Position numbers and translations under genes: made by a program. The notes below the pieces were generated by a model. It saw nothing but the letters and a program-made list of their open reading frames with translations, was not told where the DNA came from and did not search any database. A DNA stretch of 64,000 nucleotides from IMG/VR virus record IMGVR_UViG_3300042558_004148, positions 309,486-373,485 of that record; one strand, 5' to 3'. This document shows, in pieces, positions 15,326-27,569 of the stretch (position 1 is the first letter of the stretch; each line of letters opens with the position of its first letter).

Positions 15326-15985
15326 ATGCAAAGTTGTGAAAATTGTGGGAATGTACATAATGGTGAATTGGGTAGCGGGAGATTTTGCTCTCTAAAATGC
15401 TCTAGAGGATTTAGTACTAAATCTAAAAGATCGGAAATAAATTATAAGGTTTCGAAAACATTGACAGGAAAGGGAAACCCGCCAGAAATAAAAGAATGTG
15501 GCCACTGTAAAAATAAATTTGAAATTTCTTGGTCAAAACGTCTACAGACATGTTGTTCAAGAAAATGCGCCGCACAATTAAAATGGCTGGATGATGATTA
15601 TAGAAAAAATATAACGGAAGCTTCTTCAAAATCAGCTTATGAAAAACACAAAAATCCAGACATTAAGTTCGGGTGGAGAACAAGGTCAAAATTTGAGATG
15701 TCATATCCTGAAAGTATAGCAAAATCAATTCTTGATGAATATGGCATACAATATGAATATGAATATCCATTTCATCCATATTTTATAGATTTTGCAATCG
15801 TTGATCATAAAATTGCTATCGAGATAGACGGAAGACAGCATAATCAAAACGAGAGAATGTTAATAGATATTAAAAAAGATAAAAAATTGATGGAGAATGG
15901 ATGGAGAATATTTAGAATAAAGTTTCCAGAGGATAATATTAAAAATAGCATTAAAAATATATTGGCAGATATACCCTCCGCCTGA
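15326..15985 (+). CDS. free-standing endonuclease: Zn-finger modules plus DUF559/Vsr-like PD-(D/E)xK domain
   Basis: CENC...FCSLKC; CGHC...CCSRKC; YFIDFAIVDHKIAIEIDGRQH...DKKLMENGWRIFRI; GATATATA at 15301. Confidence 0.85.
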   Translation: MQSCENCGNVHNGELGSGRFCSLKCSRGFSTKSKRSEINYKVSKTLTGKGNPPEIKECGHCKNKFEISWSKRLQTCCSRKCAAQLKWLDDDYRKNITEASSKSAYEKHKNPDIKFGWRTRSKFEMSYPESIAKSILDEYGIQYEYEYPFHPYFIDFAIVDHKIAIEIDGRQHNQNERMLIDIKKDKKLMENGWRIFRIKFPEDNIKNSIKNILADIPSA

Positions 15986-16040
15986 TACGCGGTAGAAAGG
16001 TTAACTGGTTATATGTGGGTTCGAATCCCATTCTGCCAAC
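15962..16040 (+). ncRNA. tRNA-like RNA without a canonical D arm (GAT anticodon-like loop)
   Basis: TTGGCAGA/TCTGCCAA acceptor; GTGGG-TTCGAAT-CCCAT T arm; CCGC-CTGATAC-GCGG. Confidence 0.65.
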
Positions 16041-18879: not shown

Positions 18880-19338
18880 ATGACAATTAGAGAACAGATA
18901 AATGCAGATTTCGTAACTGCAATGAAAGCAAAGGACGAAAATGCTAAAATGGCTTTAAATAGCATCAAGGCTTCTATTACTAATTCAGAAAAGGCAAGTC
19001 CAACATGGATTGCAACTGACGATGAGGTAATTAAAATTGTCAGCAAAGGAATCAAACAACGTGAGGAATCTATTAAAATGTATGATTTGGCAAATAGACC
19101 AGAATTGGTTACTAAAGAACAGGATGAAATTAGTATTCTGAAAAAATACATGCCTGCTCAGATGAGTGAACAAGAGATTGCGGATGCCTTGACAGTAATC
19201 ATGCAAGGTTTTGCTGGAGTAATTACAAATTCTCAAGCACTTGTTGGTAAAACTATTGGAGAATTCAATAAACAATACCAAGGTCGTGCAGATATCGGAA
19301 CAGTTAAAATGCTAGTTAATTCATTAGTTGAATGTTAA
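18880..19338 (+). CDS. GatB/YqeY domain protein
   Basis: IREQINADFVTAMKAKD...IKQREESIKMYDLANRPELVTKEQDEISILKKYMPAQMSE. Confidence 0.9.
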   Translation: MTIREQINADFVTAMKAKDENAKMALNSIKASITNSEKASPTWIATDDEVIKIVSKGIKQREESIKMYDLANRPELVTKEQDEISILKKYMPAQMSEQEIADALTVIMQGFAGVITNSQALVGKTIGEFNKQYQGRADIGTVKMLVNSLVEC

Positions 19339-19434: not shown

Positions 19435-20352
19435 ATGAGAAGAAATTCATTAGAATCAAAGGGTCTTTCAATGTCACAGGCTCAGTCAGTATCAAATCTT
19501 TGTAACCAAAGAGCTAGAGACATCAACTTTAAATTAGCTGATATAAATAATATCAGCAAATCGATCACTGTCGATGGAATGGAATATCATGAAGTTGAGG
19601 CTAAACCAATCCCGGTGAATGTTAATGAGCTTCTTGATCAAAAGTCTAAGCTGCATGCAACCCAATCATTTCTTATGGAGAATATCAAAGCCAAGGAGGA
19701 AATGCTAAACGATGTCAAATGGGATGAATTTGAATTCGATAGGGACCAGCCTGTTAAGGGAGAATTAAAATCAATCAAGAAGTTAAACGAGGTTGATGAA
19801 AAATGGGGATGGGAACAGTTATCGACTGCCGAATATAATGAATATTTGGAGGCTGAAGCATATGCTTCCCATGTTGGTCAATTCATCCACAAAGGTGGTA
19901 AATTAGATCAATTAAGAAGTGAGCTTCCGAATATTAAGAAATTGGAATGGATGGAAATCGAGGCTGGAAAAAAGACTCCGGTTAAGGTTGAGATTCATCA
20001 CACAAGTGATGATCTTTTAAAAATCCATGAAGATCTTGCTTCTACCCACAGAAAGCATGAACAAAGGGTTAACTACTTTAAAGCAAAAATAAAGAACCTT
20101 GTTACTTCGGAAAATGCAAGGATTGCTAAAGAAAATGCAGTTGCTCAGGCTGGAATAAAAGAACACAACGATAATGTTCTTGATGCTTATAATAAAGCAA
20201 TGGAAGAATACAGATCTAGCTATAGAGAAGCTTCGGATTTATTCGAAGAAAAAAGACAAAAAGAGATCGCTCGAATCTCAGCTCTAAGAATTGAGGTTGA
20301 TCCAAGATTTAAAGAAACAATTGATATGTTTCTATCTGAGGTTTCAGAATAA
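19435..20352 (+). CDS. coiled-coil-rich hypothetical protein (GLSMSQAQSVSNLCNQ)
   Basis: 305-aa ORF downstream of a promoter. Confidence 0.75.
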   Translation: MRRNSLESKGLSMSQAQSVSNLCNQRARDINFKLADINNISKSITVDGMEYHEVEAKPIPVNVNELLDQKSKLHATQSFLMENIKAKEEMLNDVKWDEFEFDRDQPVKGELKSIKKLNEVDEKWGWEQLSTAEYNEYLEAEAYASHVGQFIHKGGKLDQLRSELPNIKKLEWMEIEAGKKTPVKVEIHHTSDDLLKIHEDLASTHRKHEQRVNYFKAKIKNLVTSENARIAKENAVAQAGIKEHNDNVLDAYNKAMEEYRSSYREASDLFEEKRQKEIARISALRIEVDPRFKETIDMFLSEVSE

Positions 20353-20360
20353 TTAAAAGT

Positions 20361-20709
20361 GGGGTTGGTTATGGATAGTCAGGAGACGATTCCATAACCA
20401 TTTGATTGAAGGTGGTAATGTTTTATATAAAATCTTATCGATGATAGTTATAAACTAATTTAAGTGTTTCTACGGAAACAGATAAAACAGCAACCGCTTC
20501 CTTTACAAAAACAAAAAAAACTGAGATAGAACTCAATTGTTAAACAAGTTACTGAAATCTCATAGAGAAAGAGGAATCTTTACCACTAGACAGATAATTG
20601 GTTAGCAAAAAGAGACTTGGTTTTTGACTTTGCCTTTGTAGTAAAGGAAGGTCTTTGACGTTGGCATTGTCGTTAGCATAGTCTATACACTTTATCATTT
20701 TCATAACCC
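20361..20709 (+). ncRNA. putative ~350-nt structured RNA or 3' UTR element
   Basis: GGTTATGGA/TCCATAACC; CTTCCTTTAC (20497)/GTAAAGGAAG (20641); TGTTTC-TACG-GAAACA. Confidence 0.4.
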
Positions 20710-20715
20710 ATAATA

Positions 20716-20787
20716 TTACCAGTTGGCGTATTGGCATACGCACCCGATCGTAAGGGAGATATTAGGTTCGATTCCTATGCTGGTAGC
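20716..20787 (+). ncRNA. tRNA-like/pseudo-tRNA with an irregular anticodon arm
   Basis: TTACCAG/CTGGTAG; GCGTA-TTGGCA-TACGC; TAGG-TTCGATT-CCTA; CCC-GATCGTAA-GGG. Confidence 0.55.
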
Positions 20788-20792
20788 AAATA

Positions 20793-20972
20793 GAGTTTGT
20801 CGGTCCGTGATGATGATTAATTCTTTTATGGATGCAGTAGGAGTAAACGTGTTGTTGGCGTAAACCACATTGCTATAAACCACATTAGTAGACCTGTAGA
20901 TGGTGATAATTAATTATCCCGTAGGGTTATAATAATAAATCAATCCATAGTGAATACAGCGTCGGCAAGCTC
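20793..20972 (+). ncRNA. putative 180-nt structured RNA
   Basis: GAGTTTGTCG/CGGCAAGCTC closing helix; TATGGAT/ATCCATA inner helix. Confidence 0.45.
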
Positions 20973-20979
20973 CATTTAT

Positions 20980-21094
20980 GTTACTGTAGCTTAGCGGAAG
21001 AGCAGTCTCCCTGTAACCGTGCGTAGGGTTCGATTCCCTTTCAGATTGGATGCGAGACGTGGGATTGGCATAGGTTCGAATCCTATCAGTAACT
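20980..21094 (+). ncRNA. tRNA-like RNA with a 44-nt anticodon loop that contains a second T-arm motif
   Basis: Perfect acceptor GTTACTG/CAGTAAC, anticodon stem GTCTC/GAGAC and T arm ATAGG-TTCGAAT-CCTAT; inner AGGG-TTCGATT-CCCT. Confidence 0.7.
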
Positions 21095-21099
21095 CAAAA

Positions 21100-21298
21100 G
21101 TGTTGTTAGCTCAATTTGGTCAGAGCTTCCGATGGGTAGATATTAAGAAGATTCTAGACACTATCTTAAAAAGGGCCACAGGGACACGGAGTGCTAGGTG
21201 ATATGCGTAATGAAATTAATTACTTCATGTAACAGGTCATAGGGTCCGTAAACGGTACATAAGGCCGTTGGGTATAGGTTCGAATCCTGTACAACACA
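21100..21298 (+). ncRNA. 199-nt tRNA-like RNA with large internal expansions
   Basis: GTGTTGT/ACAACAC-A; D arm GCTC-AATTTGGTCA-GAGC; ATAGG-TTCGAAT-CCTGT. Confidence 0.7.
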
Positions 21299-21415
21299 CG
21301 ATGTGGCGTTGACCTGTCTGCTGCCACAATGGATAAGAGGAATAGCTTTTAGGAAGTAGATCCAATTTGATGCGCAAAAAAGTGGAGGGTGACGAACGGG
21401 GAGAGACTCGTCCAT

Positions 21416-21487
21416 AGTTCCATAGTTTAACGGATAGAATTTCCCACTACGGATGGGAAGATGAGGGTTCGAATCCTTCTGGGACTA
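21416..21487 (+). tRNA. tRNA-Arg(ACG)
   Basis: TCCCA-CTACGGA-TGGGA. Confidence 0.9.
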
Positions 21488-21525
21488 CTAATTATCGAAT
21501 AATATTTAGAAAATAATAGAAAATA

Positions 21526-21728: not shown

Positions 21729-21760
21729 AAAAGGTCTCCTCTAAAAAGGAGACCTTTTTT
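21729..21760 (+). terminator. terminator/attenuator hairpin before the tRNA-Ser array
   Basis: AAAAGGTCTCCT-CTAAAA-AGGAGACCTTTT plus TT. Confidence 0.85.
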
Positions 21761-21797
21761 ATTTTACGAGATCTTTGACATATTGGAAGCCAAAAAA

Positions 21798-22070: not shown

Positions 22071-22142
22071 GGCACTGTGGTCGATTGGCTCAGGCGTCCG
22101 CCTGCAAAGCGGAAGAGATAGGTTCGATTCCTATTGGTGCCT
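22071..22142 (+). tRNA. tRNA-Cys(GCA)
   Basis: TCCGC-CTGCAAA-GCGGA; U73. Confidence 0.92.
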
Positions 22143-22160
22143 CTAATTAATAACTTGCTT

Positions 22161-22583
22161 ATGAATGATATAGAAAAAATAGCTTTAGCAAAAGCTAAGA
22201 TCGAGGAGGAAAGAGCTAACAGGAAAGAAGCTATGATTAAATACTGGAATAATTTAAAGAAATTTGAAAATCCATGCGACGTTCCAGGTATTCCTAGAGT
22301 TGAAGAAAAGGAGTATAAAGAATTCTATGTACCCAGACTTATAGCTGCTGGAGCAATACCGAAAGCAGATCTTGTAGATGGACAATTTTACTTCGGTGAA
22401 TATAGAAATGCTAATGTTGGTAAATGGATAGCTGAAAAAAACTTATTTGAACACTGGAGATATAAATTCGGATTTCGTTTAGATACTTGTAATCACTTCG
22501 AGGATGATAATGGATTTGCATTATTCGTTCCTATTAGATTAGCAAATGATGCTGAAATAGAGGAATACCTCAGCACAAAATAA
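22161..22583 (+). CDS. hypothetical protein (probable start MNDIEK)
   Basis: The track start at 22134 lies inside tRNA-Cys; ATG at 22161 is outside it. Confidence 0.7.
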   Translation: MNDIEKIALAKAKIEEERANRKEAMIKYWNNLKKFENPCDVPGIPRVEEKEYKEFYVPRLIAAGAIPKADLVDGQFYFGEYRNANVGKWIAEKNLFEHWRYKFGFRLDTCNHFEDDNGFALFVPIRLANDAEIEEYLSTK

Positions 22584-22794: not shown

Positions 22795-23478
22795 ATGTGG
22801 AATGAAACCGAGTCTATTCTTGCTAAAAAATTACTAGAGGATGGAAAAAAATATAGAGAAATATCAGAAGTAATAGGTAAAAGTTACAATTCAATTAAAA
22901 ACCATCTTTTGAAAAAATATGGAATAAATCAATCTCAATTCGACAACTTAAGAAATATCGATATTCTAATTTGCCTTTGTTGTGGAGATGAGTTCGATAA
23001 TGAGAAATCTGGCAAGACAAGAAAATATTGCTCAGTGACGTGTTCAAATATAAGTAGAGGGAAAAAAAATCTAAAAAATTGTCCGATCTGTTTTAATACA
23101 GTAGATAAAGAAAAAAGAACCAAATACTGTTCACCAGAATGTCATAGTAAATCTATAACAAAAATAAATCAGGAAAAATTAGACGGCGGGATTTTTACTG
23201 ATTCAAACAGAAAAACTATTAAGAAGTTTTTAATATTAAAAAGAGGACACTGCTGTGAAATTTGTAAAAATGAAAGTTGGAATGGCGTAAATATACCATT
23301 AATATTGGATCACATTGACGGAAATCCCCAAAATAACCTAGAAAATAATTTTAGGTTGATTTGTCCAAATTGTGACGCACTAACACCAACTTATATGGGG
23401 AGAAATATAAAAAATATAAAAAGAAAACCCCGACAAAGAGATTTAGATAGGGATATAAAAATACAGAAGAATTCGTGA
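22795..23478 (+). CDS. free-standing HNH endonuclease with an N-terminal HTH and Zn-finger modules
   Basis: CEIC...LILDHIDGNPQNNLENNFRLICPNCDA; YCSVTC and YCSPEC; GAATATATA at 22768. Confidence 0.9.
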   Translation: MWNETESILAKKLLEDGKKYREISEVIGKSYNSIKNHLLKKYGINQSQFDNLRNIDILICLCCGDEFDNEKSGKTRKYCSVTCSNISRGKKNLKNCPICFNTVDKEKRTKYCSPECHSKSITKINQEKLDGGIFTDSNRKTIKKFLILKRGHCCEICKNESWNGVNIPLILDHIDGNPQNNLENNFRLICPNCDALTPTYMGRNIKNIKRKPRQRDLDRDIKIQKNS

Positions 23479-24356: not shown

Positions 24357-24457
24357 GGTCCGGTGGTGAAGTTGGTAAACACTAAGGTGGATGTATTCGA
24401 AGGCCAAGAATAACTAACATCTACTAGGCGTCGCAGGTTCGAATCCTGCCCGGTCCA
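24357..24457 (+). ncRNA. 101-nt tRNA-like RNA with an elongated anticodon arm
   Basis: GGTCCGG/CCGGTCC-A; GTG-AAGTTGGTAAA-CAC; GTGGATGT/ACATCTAC; GCAGG-TTCGAAT-CCTGC. Confidence 0.7.
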
Positions 24458-25489: not shown

Positions 25490-25558
25490 GAAGCTTTCGT
25501 CTAGCGTTCTAGGACTCCGCGTGTAGCGGGAACATCGGTTAGAATCCGATATGCTTTA
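25490..25558 (+). pseudogene. tRNA pseudogene or tRNA-like element with a shortened anticodon loop
   Basis: GTC-TAGCGTTCTAG-GAC; CCGC-GTGTA-GCGG; ATCGG-TTAGAAT-CCGAT. Confidence 0.5.
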
Positions 25559-25667: not shown

Positions 25668-27569
25668 ATGAAAAAATTACTCATTCTCATTTTTGGAATC
25701 CTGCTGATACCATATCTAGGATTCTCACAATGTCCAACAGCTCCGGGAAATGGAGTCTATGTTATGGTCAATTCACAATATCAGGTAGGTACTGTAGCAT
25801 CAGGAAAAACCAATATAGGTCTATGTTATCAAAACACGACATCTACCTTGATCACCGGTTTGCAATACAGAGTTTGGTATGATAAGAATGCATTCGGCGG
25901 TGGAGCTCCTATAGTAACATCAACAAATACATCATTTGCACAGGTACTTCAATACGAGAATAATCTATCGGAAGGTAGCATTACAGTAACTATCGTTTAC
26001 ACTGGTAGTAGTAGCACTTTTACTATTCCATCAGGTGCATTATTTAATATAGAATTACAACATTCAGCAAACTTTCAAACCTTCACTAATAATATAACTA
26101 ATATTGAGGTAACTGGAACAACAACATTCAATAATCTAAGCTCAAATATAGATGGTCTTGATGATCTATTAACCCTTCATAATTACGGTGGGGTTATTAA
26201 TTCTGTAATGTTTAATTACCAGGGTAACTTTGTTAACGTTACCGGATCGCCAGCTAAGAATCTAACTCTTGCTCTAGAGAAGAAACCTAAAACCGGATCG
26301 ACTTGGTCTATAGATGAGATTGACACTACTGATCTTAATGGTGAATTCAATTTTTCAAAATCGATAGACACCACATACTATGACGTTAGACTTGCAGTTC
26401 AGGGTGATACATTATCAGTAGGTAATATAGTTACTGTGGCCGATGCGCAAAGAGTTAATCAATATGTTCTTGGACAACTTCAACCATCCGGATTTGATTA
26501 TTATTCTTCCGATGTAAATAATTCAGGTAACATTACAATGTCGGACGTTTACGGAATATATGGTAGAATAGCGGGAAGATTTAGTGCTTGGCCAAATAAC
26601 GTACCTGACATCAGATTCTTTAGTGCTTCCGAATATGCATCGATCAATGGATCTTCAACAAATCAGACACAATCAATACCAGGGGTAACTAATCTAACGT
26701 TCGATATATTACCAGGCCAACCAGATTCGGTCACATTTTATGTACTTGGATATGGAGATGCCAATGGTACAGGATATAACATGGCTCGTTTAGTTCCGAT
26801 AACTATTATAAATCCGAACAACACACCAAATTATATAATGGACGTGACAACGCAATATGATGACACTACATTGTCTACGATTGAAATTAACATGCCTAAG
26901 GTGACTGTAGATGAAGCAAATCTTGTAACGATACCTGTTACATTAAAATCTAATTCAGGTCCAATAGGATCGCTACAAATGGCATTATACTACGATCCAT
27001 CTTTATTAGAATTTAAGGAAATAGTTAATAGTGAAAAATCAATGGATTGGATGAGTTTCGTTAATCCAGTTGAAAATACGATCGAATGGGGAGGATTTGA
27101 TATCTCAGGAAATCAACATCCAATAAATGATGGTGAAAACCTATTTAATCTTAAGTTTCTTGCACTTGAACCACAGTCAGATTGGAATGCTAGTCCATTA
27201 TGGGTAACAAGGAAATATGCGGGTAATTCTATTGCAACTGATCTGATCATAAATCCAACCCACGGTGAAGTTAAAATAATGAATATCTCATCAGGCTACT
27301 TAAATCTACTCGGTAACAAGATAATAGTATATCCAAATCCAGTAGACGATAAAATAATGGTTGCTTTTGAGGTTTCAGAGAAAGAAAATATAACACTATC
27401 GATTTACGATATAAACGGAAAACTTGTAGTTGATTTAATGAAAACTAATATGCCAAAGGGAAAATATCAGTACACTTATGATATTGGTGAACTATCAGCT
27501 GGTTTATATGTTGCAACATTAAATATCAAAGCAAGCCAAATAGCGACAGCTAAAATAATTAAAAAGTAA
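25668..27569 (+). CDS. secreted cohesin-like / Ig-like / dockerin-like / cohesin protein with a T9SS type-A C-terminal sorting domain
   Basis: Signal peptide; ITGLQYRVWYDKNAF; SDVNNSGNITMSDV; VTIPVTL...GSLQMALYYDPSLLEF; VYPNP...LSIYDINGKLV...AGLYVATL...KIIKK. Confidence 0.85.
   Translation: MKKLLILIFGILLIPYLGFSQCPTAPGNGVYVMVNSQYQVGTVASGKTNIGLCYQNTTSTLITGLQYRVWYDKNAFGGGAPIVTSTNTSFAQVLQYENNLSEGSITVTIVYTGSSSTFTIPSGALFNIELQHSANFQTFTNNITNIEVTGTTTFNNLSSNIDGLDDLLTLHNYGGVINSVMFNYQGNFVNVTGSPAKNLTLALEKKPKTGSTWSIDEIDTTDLNGEFNFSKSIDTTYYDVRLAVQGDTLSVGNIVTVADAQRVNQYVLGQLQPSGFDYYSSDVNNSGNITMSDVYGIYGRIAGRFSAWPNNVPDIRFFSASEYASINGSSTNQTQSIPGVTNLTFDILPGQPDSVTFYVLGYGDANGTGYNMARLVPITIINPNNTPNYIMDVTTQYDDTTLSTIEINMPKVTVDEANLVTIPVTLKSNSGPIGSLQMALYYDPSLLEFKEIVNSEKSMDWMSFVNPVENTIEWGGFDISGNQHPINDGENLFNLKFLALEPQSDWNASPLWVTRKYAGNSIATDLIINPTHGEVKIMNISSGYLNLLGNKIIVYPNPVDDKIMVAFEVSEKENITLSIYDINGKLVVDLMKTNMPKGKYQYTYDIGELSAGLYVATLNIKASQIATAKIIKK

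What the first reader, a model, noticed from the sequence alone, without database searches (positions are those of the whole stretch)
21100..21298. 199-nt giant tRNA-like RNA
It has a canonical acceptor GTGTTGT/ACAACAC-A, D arm and T arm. A candidate stem TTCCG/CGGAG encloses an expanded loop containing TTAAGA/TCTTAA. A long variable region has further hairpins (ATGAA/TTCAT, ACGG/CCGT). It lacks tmRNA's G3:U70 Ala acceptor and is too short for a typical group I intron.
Basis: seen in the sequence. Interest (0 to 1): 0.7.

Follow-up and report, generated by a model that had tools for sequence, protein, structure and literature searches.

The report
Oversized tRNA-like RNA in phage
A 373-kb freshwater phage carries, inside its array of more than 30 tRNA genes, a conserved 199-base RNA gene with the outer shell of a tRNA and about 115 extra bases where the anticodon side should be; it cannot decode, and it belongs to the little-understood class of oversized "pseudo-tRNAs" already noticed in megaphages.

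Summary
It is not chance: 0 such shells appeared in 20 shuffles.

It is not a tRNA, tmRNA, group I intron or Y RNA by Rfam or ARAGORN. The phage has its own tmRNA elsewhere.

The shell is homologous to a conserved 73-75-nt phage tRNA-like family with a non-canonical "anticodon" arm. An insert-free paralog lies 27 kb upstream. The element equals that shell plus a ~115-nt insert between the D arm and that arm.

The full 199-nt form occurs in several phage lineages whose neighbouring protein has diverged to 76-79% identity. It stays 95-99% identical there while flanks differ by 10-34%. Every substitution sits in a loop or preserves a pair, and two pairs change compensatorily. No reading frame is kept. 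A metatranscriptome contig covers the insert-to-3' junction unspliced.

Best reading (about 0.5): a non-decoding structured RNA that uses a tRNA shell for processing and stability. The function of its inner module is unknown.

The closest precedent is the "enigmatic", highly conserved tRNA "introns" of Lak megaphages. I rate it a new variant of a known but unexplained kind.

The parts
21100..21106 (+). acceptor stem, 5' strand (GTGTTGT)
   Evidence: Pairs 7/7 Watson-Crick with 21291-21297. In lineage L102 two C>T changes on the partner strand give G:U pairs, so pairing is kept.
21107..21126 (+). U8-A9 and D arm (GCTC, 10-nt loop with G18G19, GAGC)
   Evidence: Read directly. The only variation is C/T at 21121 in the loop. 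The same D arm occurs in the 73-75-nt family.
21127..21241 (+). insert of about 115 nt that is absent from the 73-75-nt family and from the paralog at G000:303477-303550
   Evidence: Alignment A1. No homolog in the own genome, in about 120 loci or in five relatives' genomes. 0/117 differences against L056 and 1/117 against L102, with flanks 9-34% diverged. Boundaries are uncertain by a few nt.
21143..21169 (+). hairpin TTAAGA...TCTTAA inside the insert
   Evidence: Pair probability 0.83 in constrained folding. Invariant in all lineages, so it is untested by covariation.
21135..21177 (+). helix GGT/GCC that encloses the previous hairpin
   Evidence: U:G at 21137:21175 becomes U:A in L102 and L098, which preserves the pair.
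21210..21228 (+). hairpin ATGAA / 9-nt loop / TTCAT
   Evidence: Two compensatory double changes (G:C to U:A, and A:U to G:C) in L109 and L100.
21242..21273 (+). diverged remnant of the family's anticodon-side arm (GGGTCCGTAA...GCCGT), including hairpin AACGGT/GCCGTT at 21251-21269 and a junction TGGGT
   Evidence: Homology to the family motif GGGTCCGTAANAGGAGTTGCCGT. The stem is invariant, while the loop changes from ACATAAG to ATGAAG in L109/L100. 21272 G>A occurs in strains X15/X25 and in L102.
21274..21290 (+). T arm (ATAGG TTCGAAT CCTGT)
   Evidence: Read directly. 21289 G>A turns U:G into U:A in four lineages.
21291..21298 (+). acceptor stem 3' strand (ACAACAC) and discriminator A; no encoded CCA
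   Evidence: Almost none of the array's tRNA genes encodes CCA.
20521..20716 (+). conserved, highly represented leader region upstream of the tRNA-like genes (context: probable start of the transcription unit)
   Evidence: Word depth 12-50 in RNA runs. Conserved in L018, L012, L104 and L106.
20717..20787 (+). neighbouring odd tRNA-like gene el1 (6-nt 'anticodon' loop)
   Evidence: ARAGORN reports 'tRNA-??? (cg)'. Conserved, with compensatory acceptor changes in L102.
20980..21094 (+). neighbouring oversized tRNA-like gene el2 (115 nt; 50-nt insert in the anticodon loop containing a second T-arm-like hairpin)
   Evidence: Rfam tRNA 47.4 bits with 50 nt skipped. 7 of 33 pairs show compensatory changes across 5 lineages.
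21729..21766 (+). intrinsic-terminator-like hairpin plus T run after tRNA-Arg (21416-21488); probable end of the unit
   Evidence: It is a pattern match only.

Best explanation
The element is a gene for a non-decoding, structured RNA built on a tRNA chassis.

Shown:
- It descends from a conserved 73-75-nt phage tRNA-like family whose anticodon-side arm is already non-canonical: a 5-bp stem with a 4-nt bulge and a 6-nt loop.
- It gained about 115 nt between the D arm and that arm.
- The whole 199 nt, and the insert above all, is held nearly constant across phage lineages, with only loop or pair-preserving changes.
- It is non-coding.
- It is present in environmental RNA with the insert still joined to the 3' part.

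Inferred:
- It is transcribed with its neighbours (leader, el1, el2, el3, tRNA-Arg, terminator).
- It is released by RNase P at 21100 and by 3' processing after 21298, then given CCA, because the acceptor/T/D shell that these enzymes read is intact.
- The shell serves as a processing and stability scaffold, as in engineered 'tRNA scaffold' RNAs.
- The inner module (21127-21273) is the working part, through a protein or RNA partner that is still unknown. Possible roles are a decoy or sponge for a tRNA-directed host or phage factor.
For: Shell:
- The shell is real and not chance.
- The tertiary-contact nucleotides are kept: U8, A14, G18G19, the TTCGAAT loop, and A15 with the T before the T stem.

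Homology:
- The shell and 3' part are homologous to a 73-75-nt family found in 28 metagenome and 10 viral loci.
- An insert-free paralog lies in the same genome.
- The acceptor register shifted by one pair on both strands relative to that paralog, and 7 bp are kept.

Conservation:
- Against L056: 2/199 differences and 0/117 in the insert. dS of three adjacent genes is 0.10-0.14 and adjacent spacers are 9-10% diverged, giving P about 2e-7.
- Against L102: 2.5% (insert 0.9%), versus 26% in the neighbouring gene and 30-34% in the spacers.
- Six haplotypes give 375/375 paired cells, two compensatory pairs and four one-sided pair-preserving changes. All other changes lie in loops or junctions.

Other:
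- The ORFs on both strands are broken in L056.
- RNA run X15 has patchy cover, with a 203-nt contig at 21153-21349.
- Neighbour el2 shows the same design, with 7 compensatory pairs.
- tRNA shells carrying inserts of up to about 250 nt are processed and stable in E. coli (PMC3753655).
Against: - No direct evidence exists for the mature ends or for a stable 199-nt species.
- The only RNA contig runs 51 nt past the predicted 3' end. It may be a precursor, or DNA carried over into the library.
- Folding energy is no better than that of shuffled sequence.
- Most helices of the insert never vary, so they are untested.
- Very low divergence inside diverged flanks could also arise from recent gene conversion in a recombining tRNA array that carries homing-endonuclease genes.
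- One lineage (L098/L099) has lost the 3' 88 nt, so the element is dispensable there.
- No partner or function has been identified.
Confidence: 0.5

Rival explanations
1. Intron-bearing tRNA-like gene. The ~115-nt insert is removed from the transcript and the exons are joined. The product is either an ~82-nt RNA of the 73-75-nt family type or the freed insert.
For: - The insert-free paralog and family show that the shell can exist without the insert.
- Lak megaphages carry oversized pseudo-tRNAs that were read as intron-containing, with inserts identical across cohorts (PMC6784885).
- ARAGORN in intron mode calls the element tRNA-Pro(AGG) with a 106-nt intron, and calls el2 tRNA-Thr(TGT) with a 37-nt intron.
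- The phage encodes three RNA-ligase-family proteins.
Against: - The ARAGORN model has two mismatches in its 5-bp anticodon stem.
- Removing the insert at the homology boundaries leaves no canonical anticodon arm.
- No group I or other ribozyme matches down to E=10.
- At 115 nt the insert is far below the smallest known self-splicing group I intron, about 205 nt in Azoarcus (from memory).
- The genome has no splicing endonuclease and no RtcB.
- No spliced joint appears in any run, and the one RNA contig is unspliced across the 3' junction.
- The insert lies at the D/anticodon junction, not in the anticodon loop.
Confidence: 0.17
2. The RNA has no function of its own. It is a disrupted or decaying copy of the tRNA-like family whose near-identity between lineages reflects recent gene conversion or horizontal spread within recombining tRNA arrays, possibly driven by free-standing homing endonucleases.
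For: - The locus is mosaic. el2 is 17-19% diverged, and the block to the right of 21489 has dS 0.71 between strains that are 3% apart elsewhere.
- Strain-specific insertions of 1.8-3 kb occur at 21490-21520.
- An HNH-motif ORF lies at 22795-23478, and a GIY-YIG gene lies in L113.
- tRNA fragments are scattered in these arrays.
- The element's anticodon-side arm has drifted from the family consensus.
- L098/L099 carry a truncated copy.
- Folding energy is ordinary.
Against: - The substitutions that did occur are all pair-preserving or in loops, including two compensatory doubles.
- The identity island matches the element's borders to within about 20 nt on both sides in L056.
- The same holds in L102, where the flanks are about 30% diverged.
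- The element is kept at the same site in at least five haplotype groups.
Confidence: 0.15
3. An aminoacylated tRNA-like or tmRNA-like RNA. The shell is charged and the RNA acts on the ribosome or in an amino-acid transfer reaction.
For: - The acceptor/T/D shell and A73 are intact.
- The L102 lineage has G3:U70 plus A73, the main alanine identity set (the identity rule is from memory).
- Relatives place a tmRNA in the same neighbourhood (L012, L104).
Against: - The window and four other haplotypes have G3:C70.
- The D arm is of the type found in tRNAs whose synthetases read the anticodon, which is missing here.
- No tag-like frame or pseudoknots were recognised, and Rfam tmRNA gives no match.
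- The phage has a proper tmRNA at G000:157762-158221.
Confidence: 0.04
4. A Y-RNA-like (YrlA-like) partner of a Ro60/Rsr protein.
For: - More distant relatives have a Ro60-type gene (TROVE 26.9 bits, vWA_Ro60 30.2 bits) directly upstream of the homolog of ORF 19435-20352, followed by the same leader and an expanded tRNA-like gene.
- YrlA RNAs contain a tRNA-like module (from memory).
- The family motif contains GGUCCG.
Against: - The genome has no TROVE gene and no homolog of that protein.
- The Rfam YrlA match is 19.4 bits against a cut-off of 69. It spans the T arm of el2 plus the D arm of el3, an artefact that appears between many adjacent tRNAs and in 13 of 14 control genomes.
- The order of the arms is that of a tRNA, not the permuted order of YrlA.
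Confidence: 0.04

Closest known systems
Oversized 'pseudo-tRNAs' with highly conserved 'enigmatic introns' in Lak megaphages of Prevotella (Devoto et al. 2019, PMC6784885)
   Same: - Both are huge phages of (probably) Bacteroidota with arrays of 30 or more tRNA genes.
- Some tRNA-shaped genes are far too long. An example is a Tyr(GTA) gene with a 93-nt insert that itself holds a T-arm-like GGTTCGAATCC, as el2 does here.
- The inserts are identical or nearly so across samples while the surroundings vary.
- They match no Rfam family, and no mechanism is known.
   Different: - The Lak cases were modelled as anticodon-loop introns whose removal gives a typed tRNA.
- Here the insert lies between the D arm and an anticodon-side arm that is non-canonical even in the insert-free relatives, so no decoding tRNA results.
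- There is no sequence similarity to the one Lak sequence seen.
- The habitat is freshwater.
- Splicing has not been shown in either system.
73-75-nt phage tRNA-like family defined here (called tRNA-Val(AAC)/Phe(AAA)/Ile(AAT) by ARAGORN)
   Same: The acceptor/D/T shell, the GGGTCCGTAA...GCCGT core, the 3' trailer start CGAT and the position in tRNA arrays are shared. A paralog lies in the same genome.
   Different: - The element has about 115 extra nt and 7-8 extra nt in the bulge region.
- Its arm no longer fits the family's 5-bp stem, GTTG bulge and GTAANA loop.
- The family model R1 does not find it.
Engineered 'tRNA scaffold' RNAs (Ponchon and Dardel; PMC3753655)
   Same: The acceptor stem, T arm and D arm are kept and the anticodon side is replaced by a foreign structured RNA. 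Such chimeras are processed and protected by the bacterial tRNA machinery for inserts up to about 250 nt.
   Different: Those are artificial. Their insert replaces the anticodon stem-loop as one hairpin, whereas here the insert forms two irregular domains next to a remnant arm.
Phage T4 RNAC and RNAD (species 1 and 2 RNAs)
   Same: They are small RNAs of unknown role transcribed from a phage tRNA gene region (PMC3014915).
   Different: Their tRNA-likeness is recalled from memory only.
tmRNA
   Same: It has a tRNA-like acceptor/T domain formed by the two ends of a longer RNA. Phage-encoded examples exist in this clade.
   Different: tmRNA lacks a D stem, carries G3:U70, a tag frame and pseudoknots, and is about 350-450 nt long. 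None of this holds for the window's element.

Membership tests
canonical tRNA (Rfam RF00005) | 7-bp acceptor stem, D arm, and T arm with a T-psi-C loop | tested here: met
canonical tRNA (Rfam RF00005) | 5-bp anticodon stem with a 7-nt loop (U33, anticodon, purine 37) at the standard place, and a length of about 70-95 nt | tested here: not met
   The element is 199 nt. It is not called by ARAGORN or by Rfam, even at E=10. Intron-mode ARAGORN gives a Pro(AGG) model with 2 mismatches in 5 stem pairs.
tmRNA (RF00023) | G3:U70 in the acceptor stem | tested here: not met
   G3:C70 in the window and in 4 other haplotypes. G3:U70 occurs only in L102.
tmRNA (RF00023) | covariance-model match, no D stem, tag reading frame and pseudoknots | tested here: not met
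   No Rfam match. A full D stem is present. The genome's real tmRNA lies at G000:157762-158221, 64.3 bits.
group I intron in a tRNA gene | conserved catalytic core (P3-P9), detectable by Rfam, inserted in the anticodon loop | tested here: not met
   No match at E up to 10. The insert is about 115 nt and lies at the D/anticodon junction.
protein-spliced (bulge-helix-bulge) tRNA intron | splicing endonuclease and RtcB-type ligase available | tested here: not met
   No PF01974 and no PF01139 in the phage genome. The host enzymes are unknown.
protein-spliced (bulge-helix-bulge) tRNA intron | bulge-helix-bulge motif at the exon-intron borders | tested here: inconclusive
   None was seen on inspection of 21120-21135 and 21235-21250. 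No formal search was run.
YrlA / Y RNA-like (RF02553) | covariance-model score above 69 bits, permuted T-then-D order, and a Ro60 gene | tested here: not met
   19.4 bits across two adjacent genes. No TROVE gene in the genome.
73-75-nt phage tRNA-like family (model R1) | shell plus the core GGGTCCGTAANAGGAGTTGCCGT followed by the T arm | tested here: inconclusive
   The shell, GGGTCCGTAA, GCCGT and the T arm are present and alignable. The arm is altered, however, and R1 does not score the element. It is a derived relative, not a regular member.
Lak-type oversized pseudo-tRNA with conserved insert | tRNA-shaped gene much longer than a tRNA, within a megaphage tRNA array | tested here: met
Lak-type oversized pseudo-tRNA with conserved insert | insert far more conserved than its surroundings | tested here: met
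Lak-type oversized pseudo-tRNA with conserved insert | removal of the insert yields a typed, canonical tRNA | tested here: not met
Lak-type oversized pseudo-tRNA with conserved insert | insert actually removed from the RNA | not testable with these tools
   Only assembled contigs of RNA runs were available. No joint was seen. Splicing has not been shown for Lak either.

The most novel reading that the evidence does not exclude
Huge phages of Bacteroidota use tRNA shells as a general natural expression platform.
- A whole class of oversized tRNA-like genes would be stable chimeric RNAs made by the host tRNA-processing enzymes. Candidates are el2, el3, 24357-24457, the AGTCAGG family, the 102-121-nt genes in relatives and the Lak 'introns'.
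- Their ultra-conserved inner modules would be effectors, for example decoys for tRNA-directed defence nucleases or for Ro60-type RNA surveillance.
- Where the insert itself mimics a tRNA (el2, Lak Thr/Tyr), RNase P and RNase Z could excise it and a phage RNA ligase could reseal the outer tRNA. That would be a protein-only, ribozyme-free form of bacterial tRNA 'splicing'.
Probability: 0.15. Interest if true: 0.8.

Novelty: new variant of a known kind. Interest (0 to 1): 0.5.

Why it matters
Oversized tRNA-shaped genes with strangely invariant inserts were flagged as 'enigmatic' in Lak megaphages in 2019 and have not been explained since.

This element shows three things:
- The phenomenon extends to freshwater huge phages.
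- The insert need not sit in an anticodon loop, and its removal need not yield a usable tRNA.
- The whole chimera evolves like a structured RNA.

That moves the question from 'are these introns?' towards 'what do tRNA-scaffolded phage RNAs do?'. It also gives a compact, well-delimited 199-nt candidate, with natural variants and an insert-free paralog, for processing, binding and deletion experiments.

Tried and rejected
- Rfam at gathering and at E=10: nothing other than neighbouring tRNAs and a spurious YrlA match.
- Search for the insert elsewhere: BLAST and nhmmer against about 120 loci and the own genome, BLAST and covariance model R2 against five relatives' genomes, and exact-pattern scans of IMG/VR. 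Only the same locus of close lineages was found.
- Origin of the insert by internal duplication or fusion of two tandem copies: the similarities look suggestive (GGTCAGAG/GGTCATAG; GGGAGATATTA in el1 against GGTAGATATTA) but are not significant against shuffles, P 0.15-0.8.
- Coding potential: the ORFs at 21019-21201(+) and 21194-21415(-) are broken in L056.
- Complementarity of the insert to the rest of the phage genome: no better than for shuffles.
- The family in bacterial genomes: two chance hits inside coding sequence only.
- Splicing evidence: no joints in 8 runs, but these are assembled contigs and cannot show absence.
- A recurring GTAAC word after the 5' strand of the anticodon-side stem in several oversized genes: noted, but no consistent structural role was found.
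- Relatives could not be drawn automatically for a virus record.

Full report
CONTEXT. The window is the last 64 kb of a 373,485-bp phage record with direct terminal repeats. Between 9.2 and 25.6 kb it carries 32 ARAGORN and 34 Rfam tRNA calls. The only DNA-level relatives among deposited phages are short tRNA matches to uncultured 630-640-kb phages and to Flavobacterium phages. The phage occurs in many lake, river and estuary metagenomes.

THE OBSERVATION.
- a 7/7 Watson-Crick acceptor stem with discriminator A;
- U8 and A9;
- a D arm with G18G19;
- a T arm with loop TTCGAAT;
- the internal complementary words.

Neither ARAGORN nor Rfam calls the stretch, even at E=10. A purpose-written scan for acceptor + D arm + T arm at 95-450 nt finds only this element and its neighbour 20980-21094 in the window. 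It finds none in 20 shuffles. With real T arms and shuffled upstream sequence, 0.11 hits are expected. Folding energy is ordinary, with z = -1.08 for the whole element and +0.65 for the insert.

WHAT IT DERIVES FROM.
- The same genome holds a 74-nt tRNA-like gene at G000:303477-303550. It shares the D arm, a core GGGTCCGTAA...GCCGT, the T arm, the word TGTTGT/ACAACA in the acceptor stem and the start of the 3' trailer.
- Pattern scans anchored on that core recovered a tightly conserved 73-75-nt family in 10 viral and 28 metagenome loci. The members lie mostly in tRNA arrays and sometimes alone.
- ARAGORN names these genes Val(AAC), Phe(AAA) or Ile(AAT). The stem this requires has three G:U pairs and a C:A mismatch.
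- The alternative is five Watson-Crick pairs with a 4-nt GTTG bulge and a 6-nt loop GTAANA. It is what Infernal skips over, and it tolerates the one variant in the bulge. I therefore regard the family as non-decoding. This is an inference, not a demonstration.
- The family was not found in 185,579 bacterial and archaeal genomes at pattern level.
- Aligned to the family, the element is the same RNA with about 115 nt added between the D-stem 3' strand and GGGTCC, plus 7-8 nt added in the bulge region. MAFFT can also place the gap inside the D loop, because GGTCATAG just before GGGTCC resembles GGTCAGAG of the D arm. The borders are therefore uncertain by a few bases.
- Relative to the paralog, the acceptor helix has moved by one pair on both strands and keeps 7 bp.

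IS THE INSERT JUNK? The insert has no homolog in the genome, in about 120 fetched loci or in five relatives' genomes. The 199-nt form, however, is not confined to one strain.
- Homologs of the neighbouring 305-aa protein led to contigs that carry the full element in lineages where that protein is 98%, 79% and 76% identical. A copy truncated after nt 111 occurs in one lineage.
- Against L056, three adjacent genes have dS 0.10-0.14 and the two adjacent spacers are 8.9% and 10.3% diverged. The element shows 2/199 differences and its insert 0/117, with P about 2e-7 and 4e-6 at a 10% rate.
- Against L102, the neighbouring gene differs by 26% and the spacers by 30-34%. The element differs by 2.5% and its insert by 0.9%.
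- Across six haplotypes all 375 pair cells of the constrained fold are standard pairs. Two pairs of the ATGAA/TTCAT hairpin change on both sides. Four pairs change on one side with pairing kept (acceptor x2, T stem, GGT/GCC). All other changes lie in the D loop, an internal loop, two hairpin loops and the junction before the T arm. Only 2 of 500 shuffles reach these values. The structure was derived from one of these sequences, so the percentage paired is flattering. The compensatory changes are not affected by that.
- Nucleotides 23-106 are almost invariant, so most of the insert's helices are untested.
- Both ORFs that overlap the element are broken in L056.

EXPRESSION. In one metatranscriptome (X15) coverage over 1.7 kb is patchy rather than even.
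- Coverage is strong on a conserved leader at about 20521-20663.
- A 203-nt contig runs from 21153 to 21349, that is, from inside the insert through the T arm and 51 nt beyond the predicted 3' end.
- No skipped joints were seen in eight runs.

These are assembled contigs. They show presence in RNA and an unspliced junction. They do not show the mature ends, and they cannot exclude splicing.

WHAT IT IS NOT.
- tmRNA: no G3:U70, a full D stem, no model match, and a proper tmRNA elsewhere in the genome.
- Group I or another known ribozyme: no match.
- Protein-spliced intron: no endonuclease and no RtcB, although three RNA-ligase-family genes exist.
- Y RNA: the weak YrlA match joins the T arm of one gene to the D arm of the next. 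The same artefact appears between other tRNAs and in control genomes, and the genome has no Ro60 gene.

THE WIDER PATTERN. The element is one of several oversized tRNA-shaped genes in this phage group.
- el2 (20980-21094) has a 50-nt insert in the anticodon loop with a second T-arm-like hairpin. It has seven compensatory pairs across five lineages.
- Further examples are 24357-24457 (101 nt) and a family with acceptor AGTCAGG and a leucine-type D arm, at 98-170 nt.
- Relatives carry genes of 102, 121, 133 and 170 nt.
- Devoto et al. 2019 described the same phenomenon in Lak megaphages. They reported pseudo-tRNAs 'substantially larger than expected', read as intron-containing. The introns were identical across cohorts, one 'may encode a tRNA', and none matched Rfam (PMC6784885).

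MECHANISM. I favour (0.5) a stable chimeric RNA.
- The shell supplies what RNase P, 3' processing, the CCA-adding enzyme and tRNA-protective factors need. This is as in engineered tRNA scaffolds, which carry inserts up to about 250 nt (PMC3753655).
- The conserved inner module would do the work.
- Shown: the shell, the homology, the constraint, the non-coding status and the presence in RNA.
- Inferred: the processing sites, the stability and the existence of a partner.

Rivals are true splicing (0.17), no function with gene conversion (0.15), charging or a tmRNA-like role (0.04) and a Ro60 partner (0.04).

NOVELTY AND SCORE. This is a new variant of a kind that is known but unexplained. It is interesting because it does not fit the intron reading and because it offers a clean experimental handle. 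It is limited by the absence of any functional clue.

Noticed in passing
window 20980-21094: 115-nt tRNA-like gene (el2). Its 50-nt anticodon-loop insert contains a second T-arm-like hairpin (loop TTCGATT). 7 of 33 pairs show compensatory changes across five lineages. ARAGORN intron mode calls it Thr(TGT) with a 37-nt intron, but the anticodon stem of that model is contradicted by covariation, which supports GTCTC/GGGAT. It closely parallels the Lak 'Thr(TGT) intron that may encode a tRNA'.
   Followed up: partly
window 20717-20787: 71-nt tRNA-like gene (el1) with a 6-nt 'anticodon' loop. It always directly follows the conserved leader. L102 shows compensatory acceptor changes.
   Followed up: partly
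window 20521-20716: Conserved non-coding leader, with blocks such as AAAAACTGAGATAGAACTCA and GTTTTTGACTTTGCCTTTG. It has the highest depth of the locus in four RNA runs and is conserved down to relatives with 53-65% protein identity. It could be a promoter/leader or an independent small RNA.
   Followed up: partly
window 24357-24457; 15963-16039; 25490-25558: Further odd tRNA-like genes found by Rfam only. The first is 101 nt with an 8-bp stem and a 22-nt loop. The second is a D-arm-less gene with loop CTGATAC (Ile GAU, the one anticodon missing from the regular set) and a long extra arm. The third is a weak 69-nt match.
   Followed up: no
G000:258474-259698 and 303655-303752 (outside the window; loci L040, L041): A family of tRNA-like genes with acceptor AGTCAGG/CCTGACT-A and a leucine-type D arm, with middles of very different length (87-170 nt). 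The same acceptor sequence is used by the 73-75-nt family in other phages.
   Followed up: partly
L106/L107 1298-2923; L104 1034-2140: In relatives, the homolog of ORF 19435-20352 is preceded by a Ro60-type protein (TROVE plus vWA_Ro60, both above the Pfam cut-offs) or by a T4 Rnl1-type RNA ligase. It is followed by the leader, a 102-nt expanded tRNA-like gene and, in L104 only, a tmRNA. This looks like an RNA-surveillance/repair neighbourhood. L012 also carries a tmRNA, but upstream of the homolog.
   Followed up: partly
L102 4513-4711: In one lineage the element's acceptor stem carries G3:U70 and G6:U67 with A73, which is formally the alanine identity pair.
   Followed up: no
window 21490-21520: Other strains (runs X14, X26) have 1.8-kb and 3.0-kb insertions here, just after tRNA-Arg(ACG). 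The block to the right (ORF 22134-22583) has dS 0.71 against a strain that is otherwise at dS about 0.12, so this is a recombination hot spot.
   Followed up: no
window 22795-23478: 227-aa ORF inside the tRNA array with zinc-ribbon-like Cys pairs and an HNH-type motif (DHIDGNPQNN...CPNC). It is probably a free-standing homing endonuclease.
   Followed up: no
G000:157762-158221 (outside the window): Phage-encoded tmRNA, 64.3 bits, above the Rfam cut-off.
   Followed up: no
window 18880-19338 and 25668-27569: The first is a YqeY-like protein (GatB/YqeY domain) next to the array. The second is a 633-aa ORF whose 633-aa syntenic counterpart in L098 is recorded with Cohesin and Por_Secre_tail domains. 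That would point to a Bacteroidota host (type IX secretion signal).
   Followed up: partly
window 20845-20870; L038 (reverse strand) upstream of its el2 copy: Isolated 5' tRNA-like fragments occur in spacers (AAACGTGTTGTTGGCGTA; GGGTCGGTAGCTCAGTTGGTTAGAGC with no 3' partner). In L038 a 118-nt stretch is bounded by GTGTTGT...ACAACACA but has no D or T arm.
   Followed up: no
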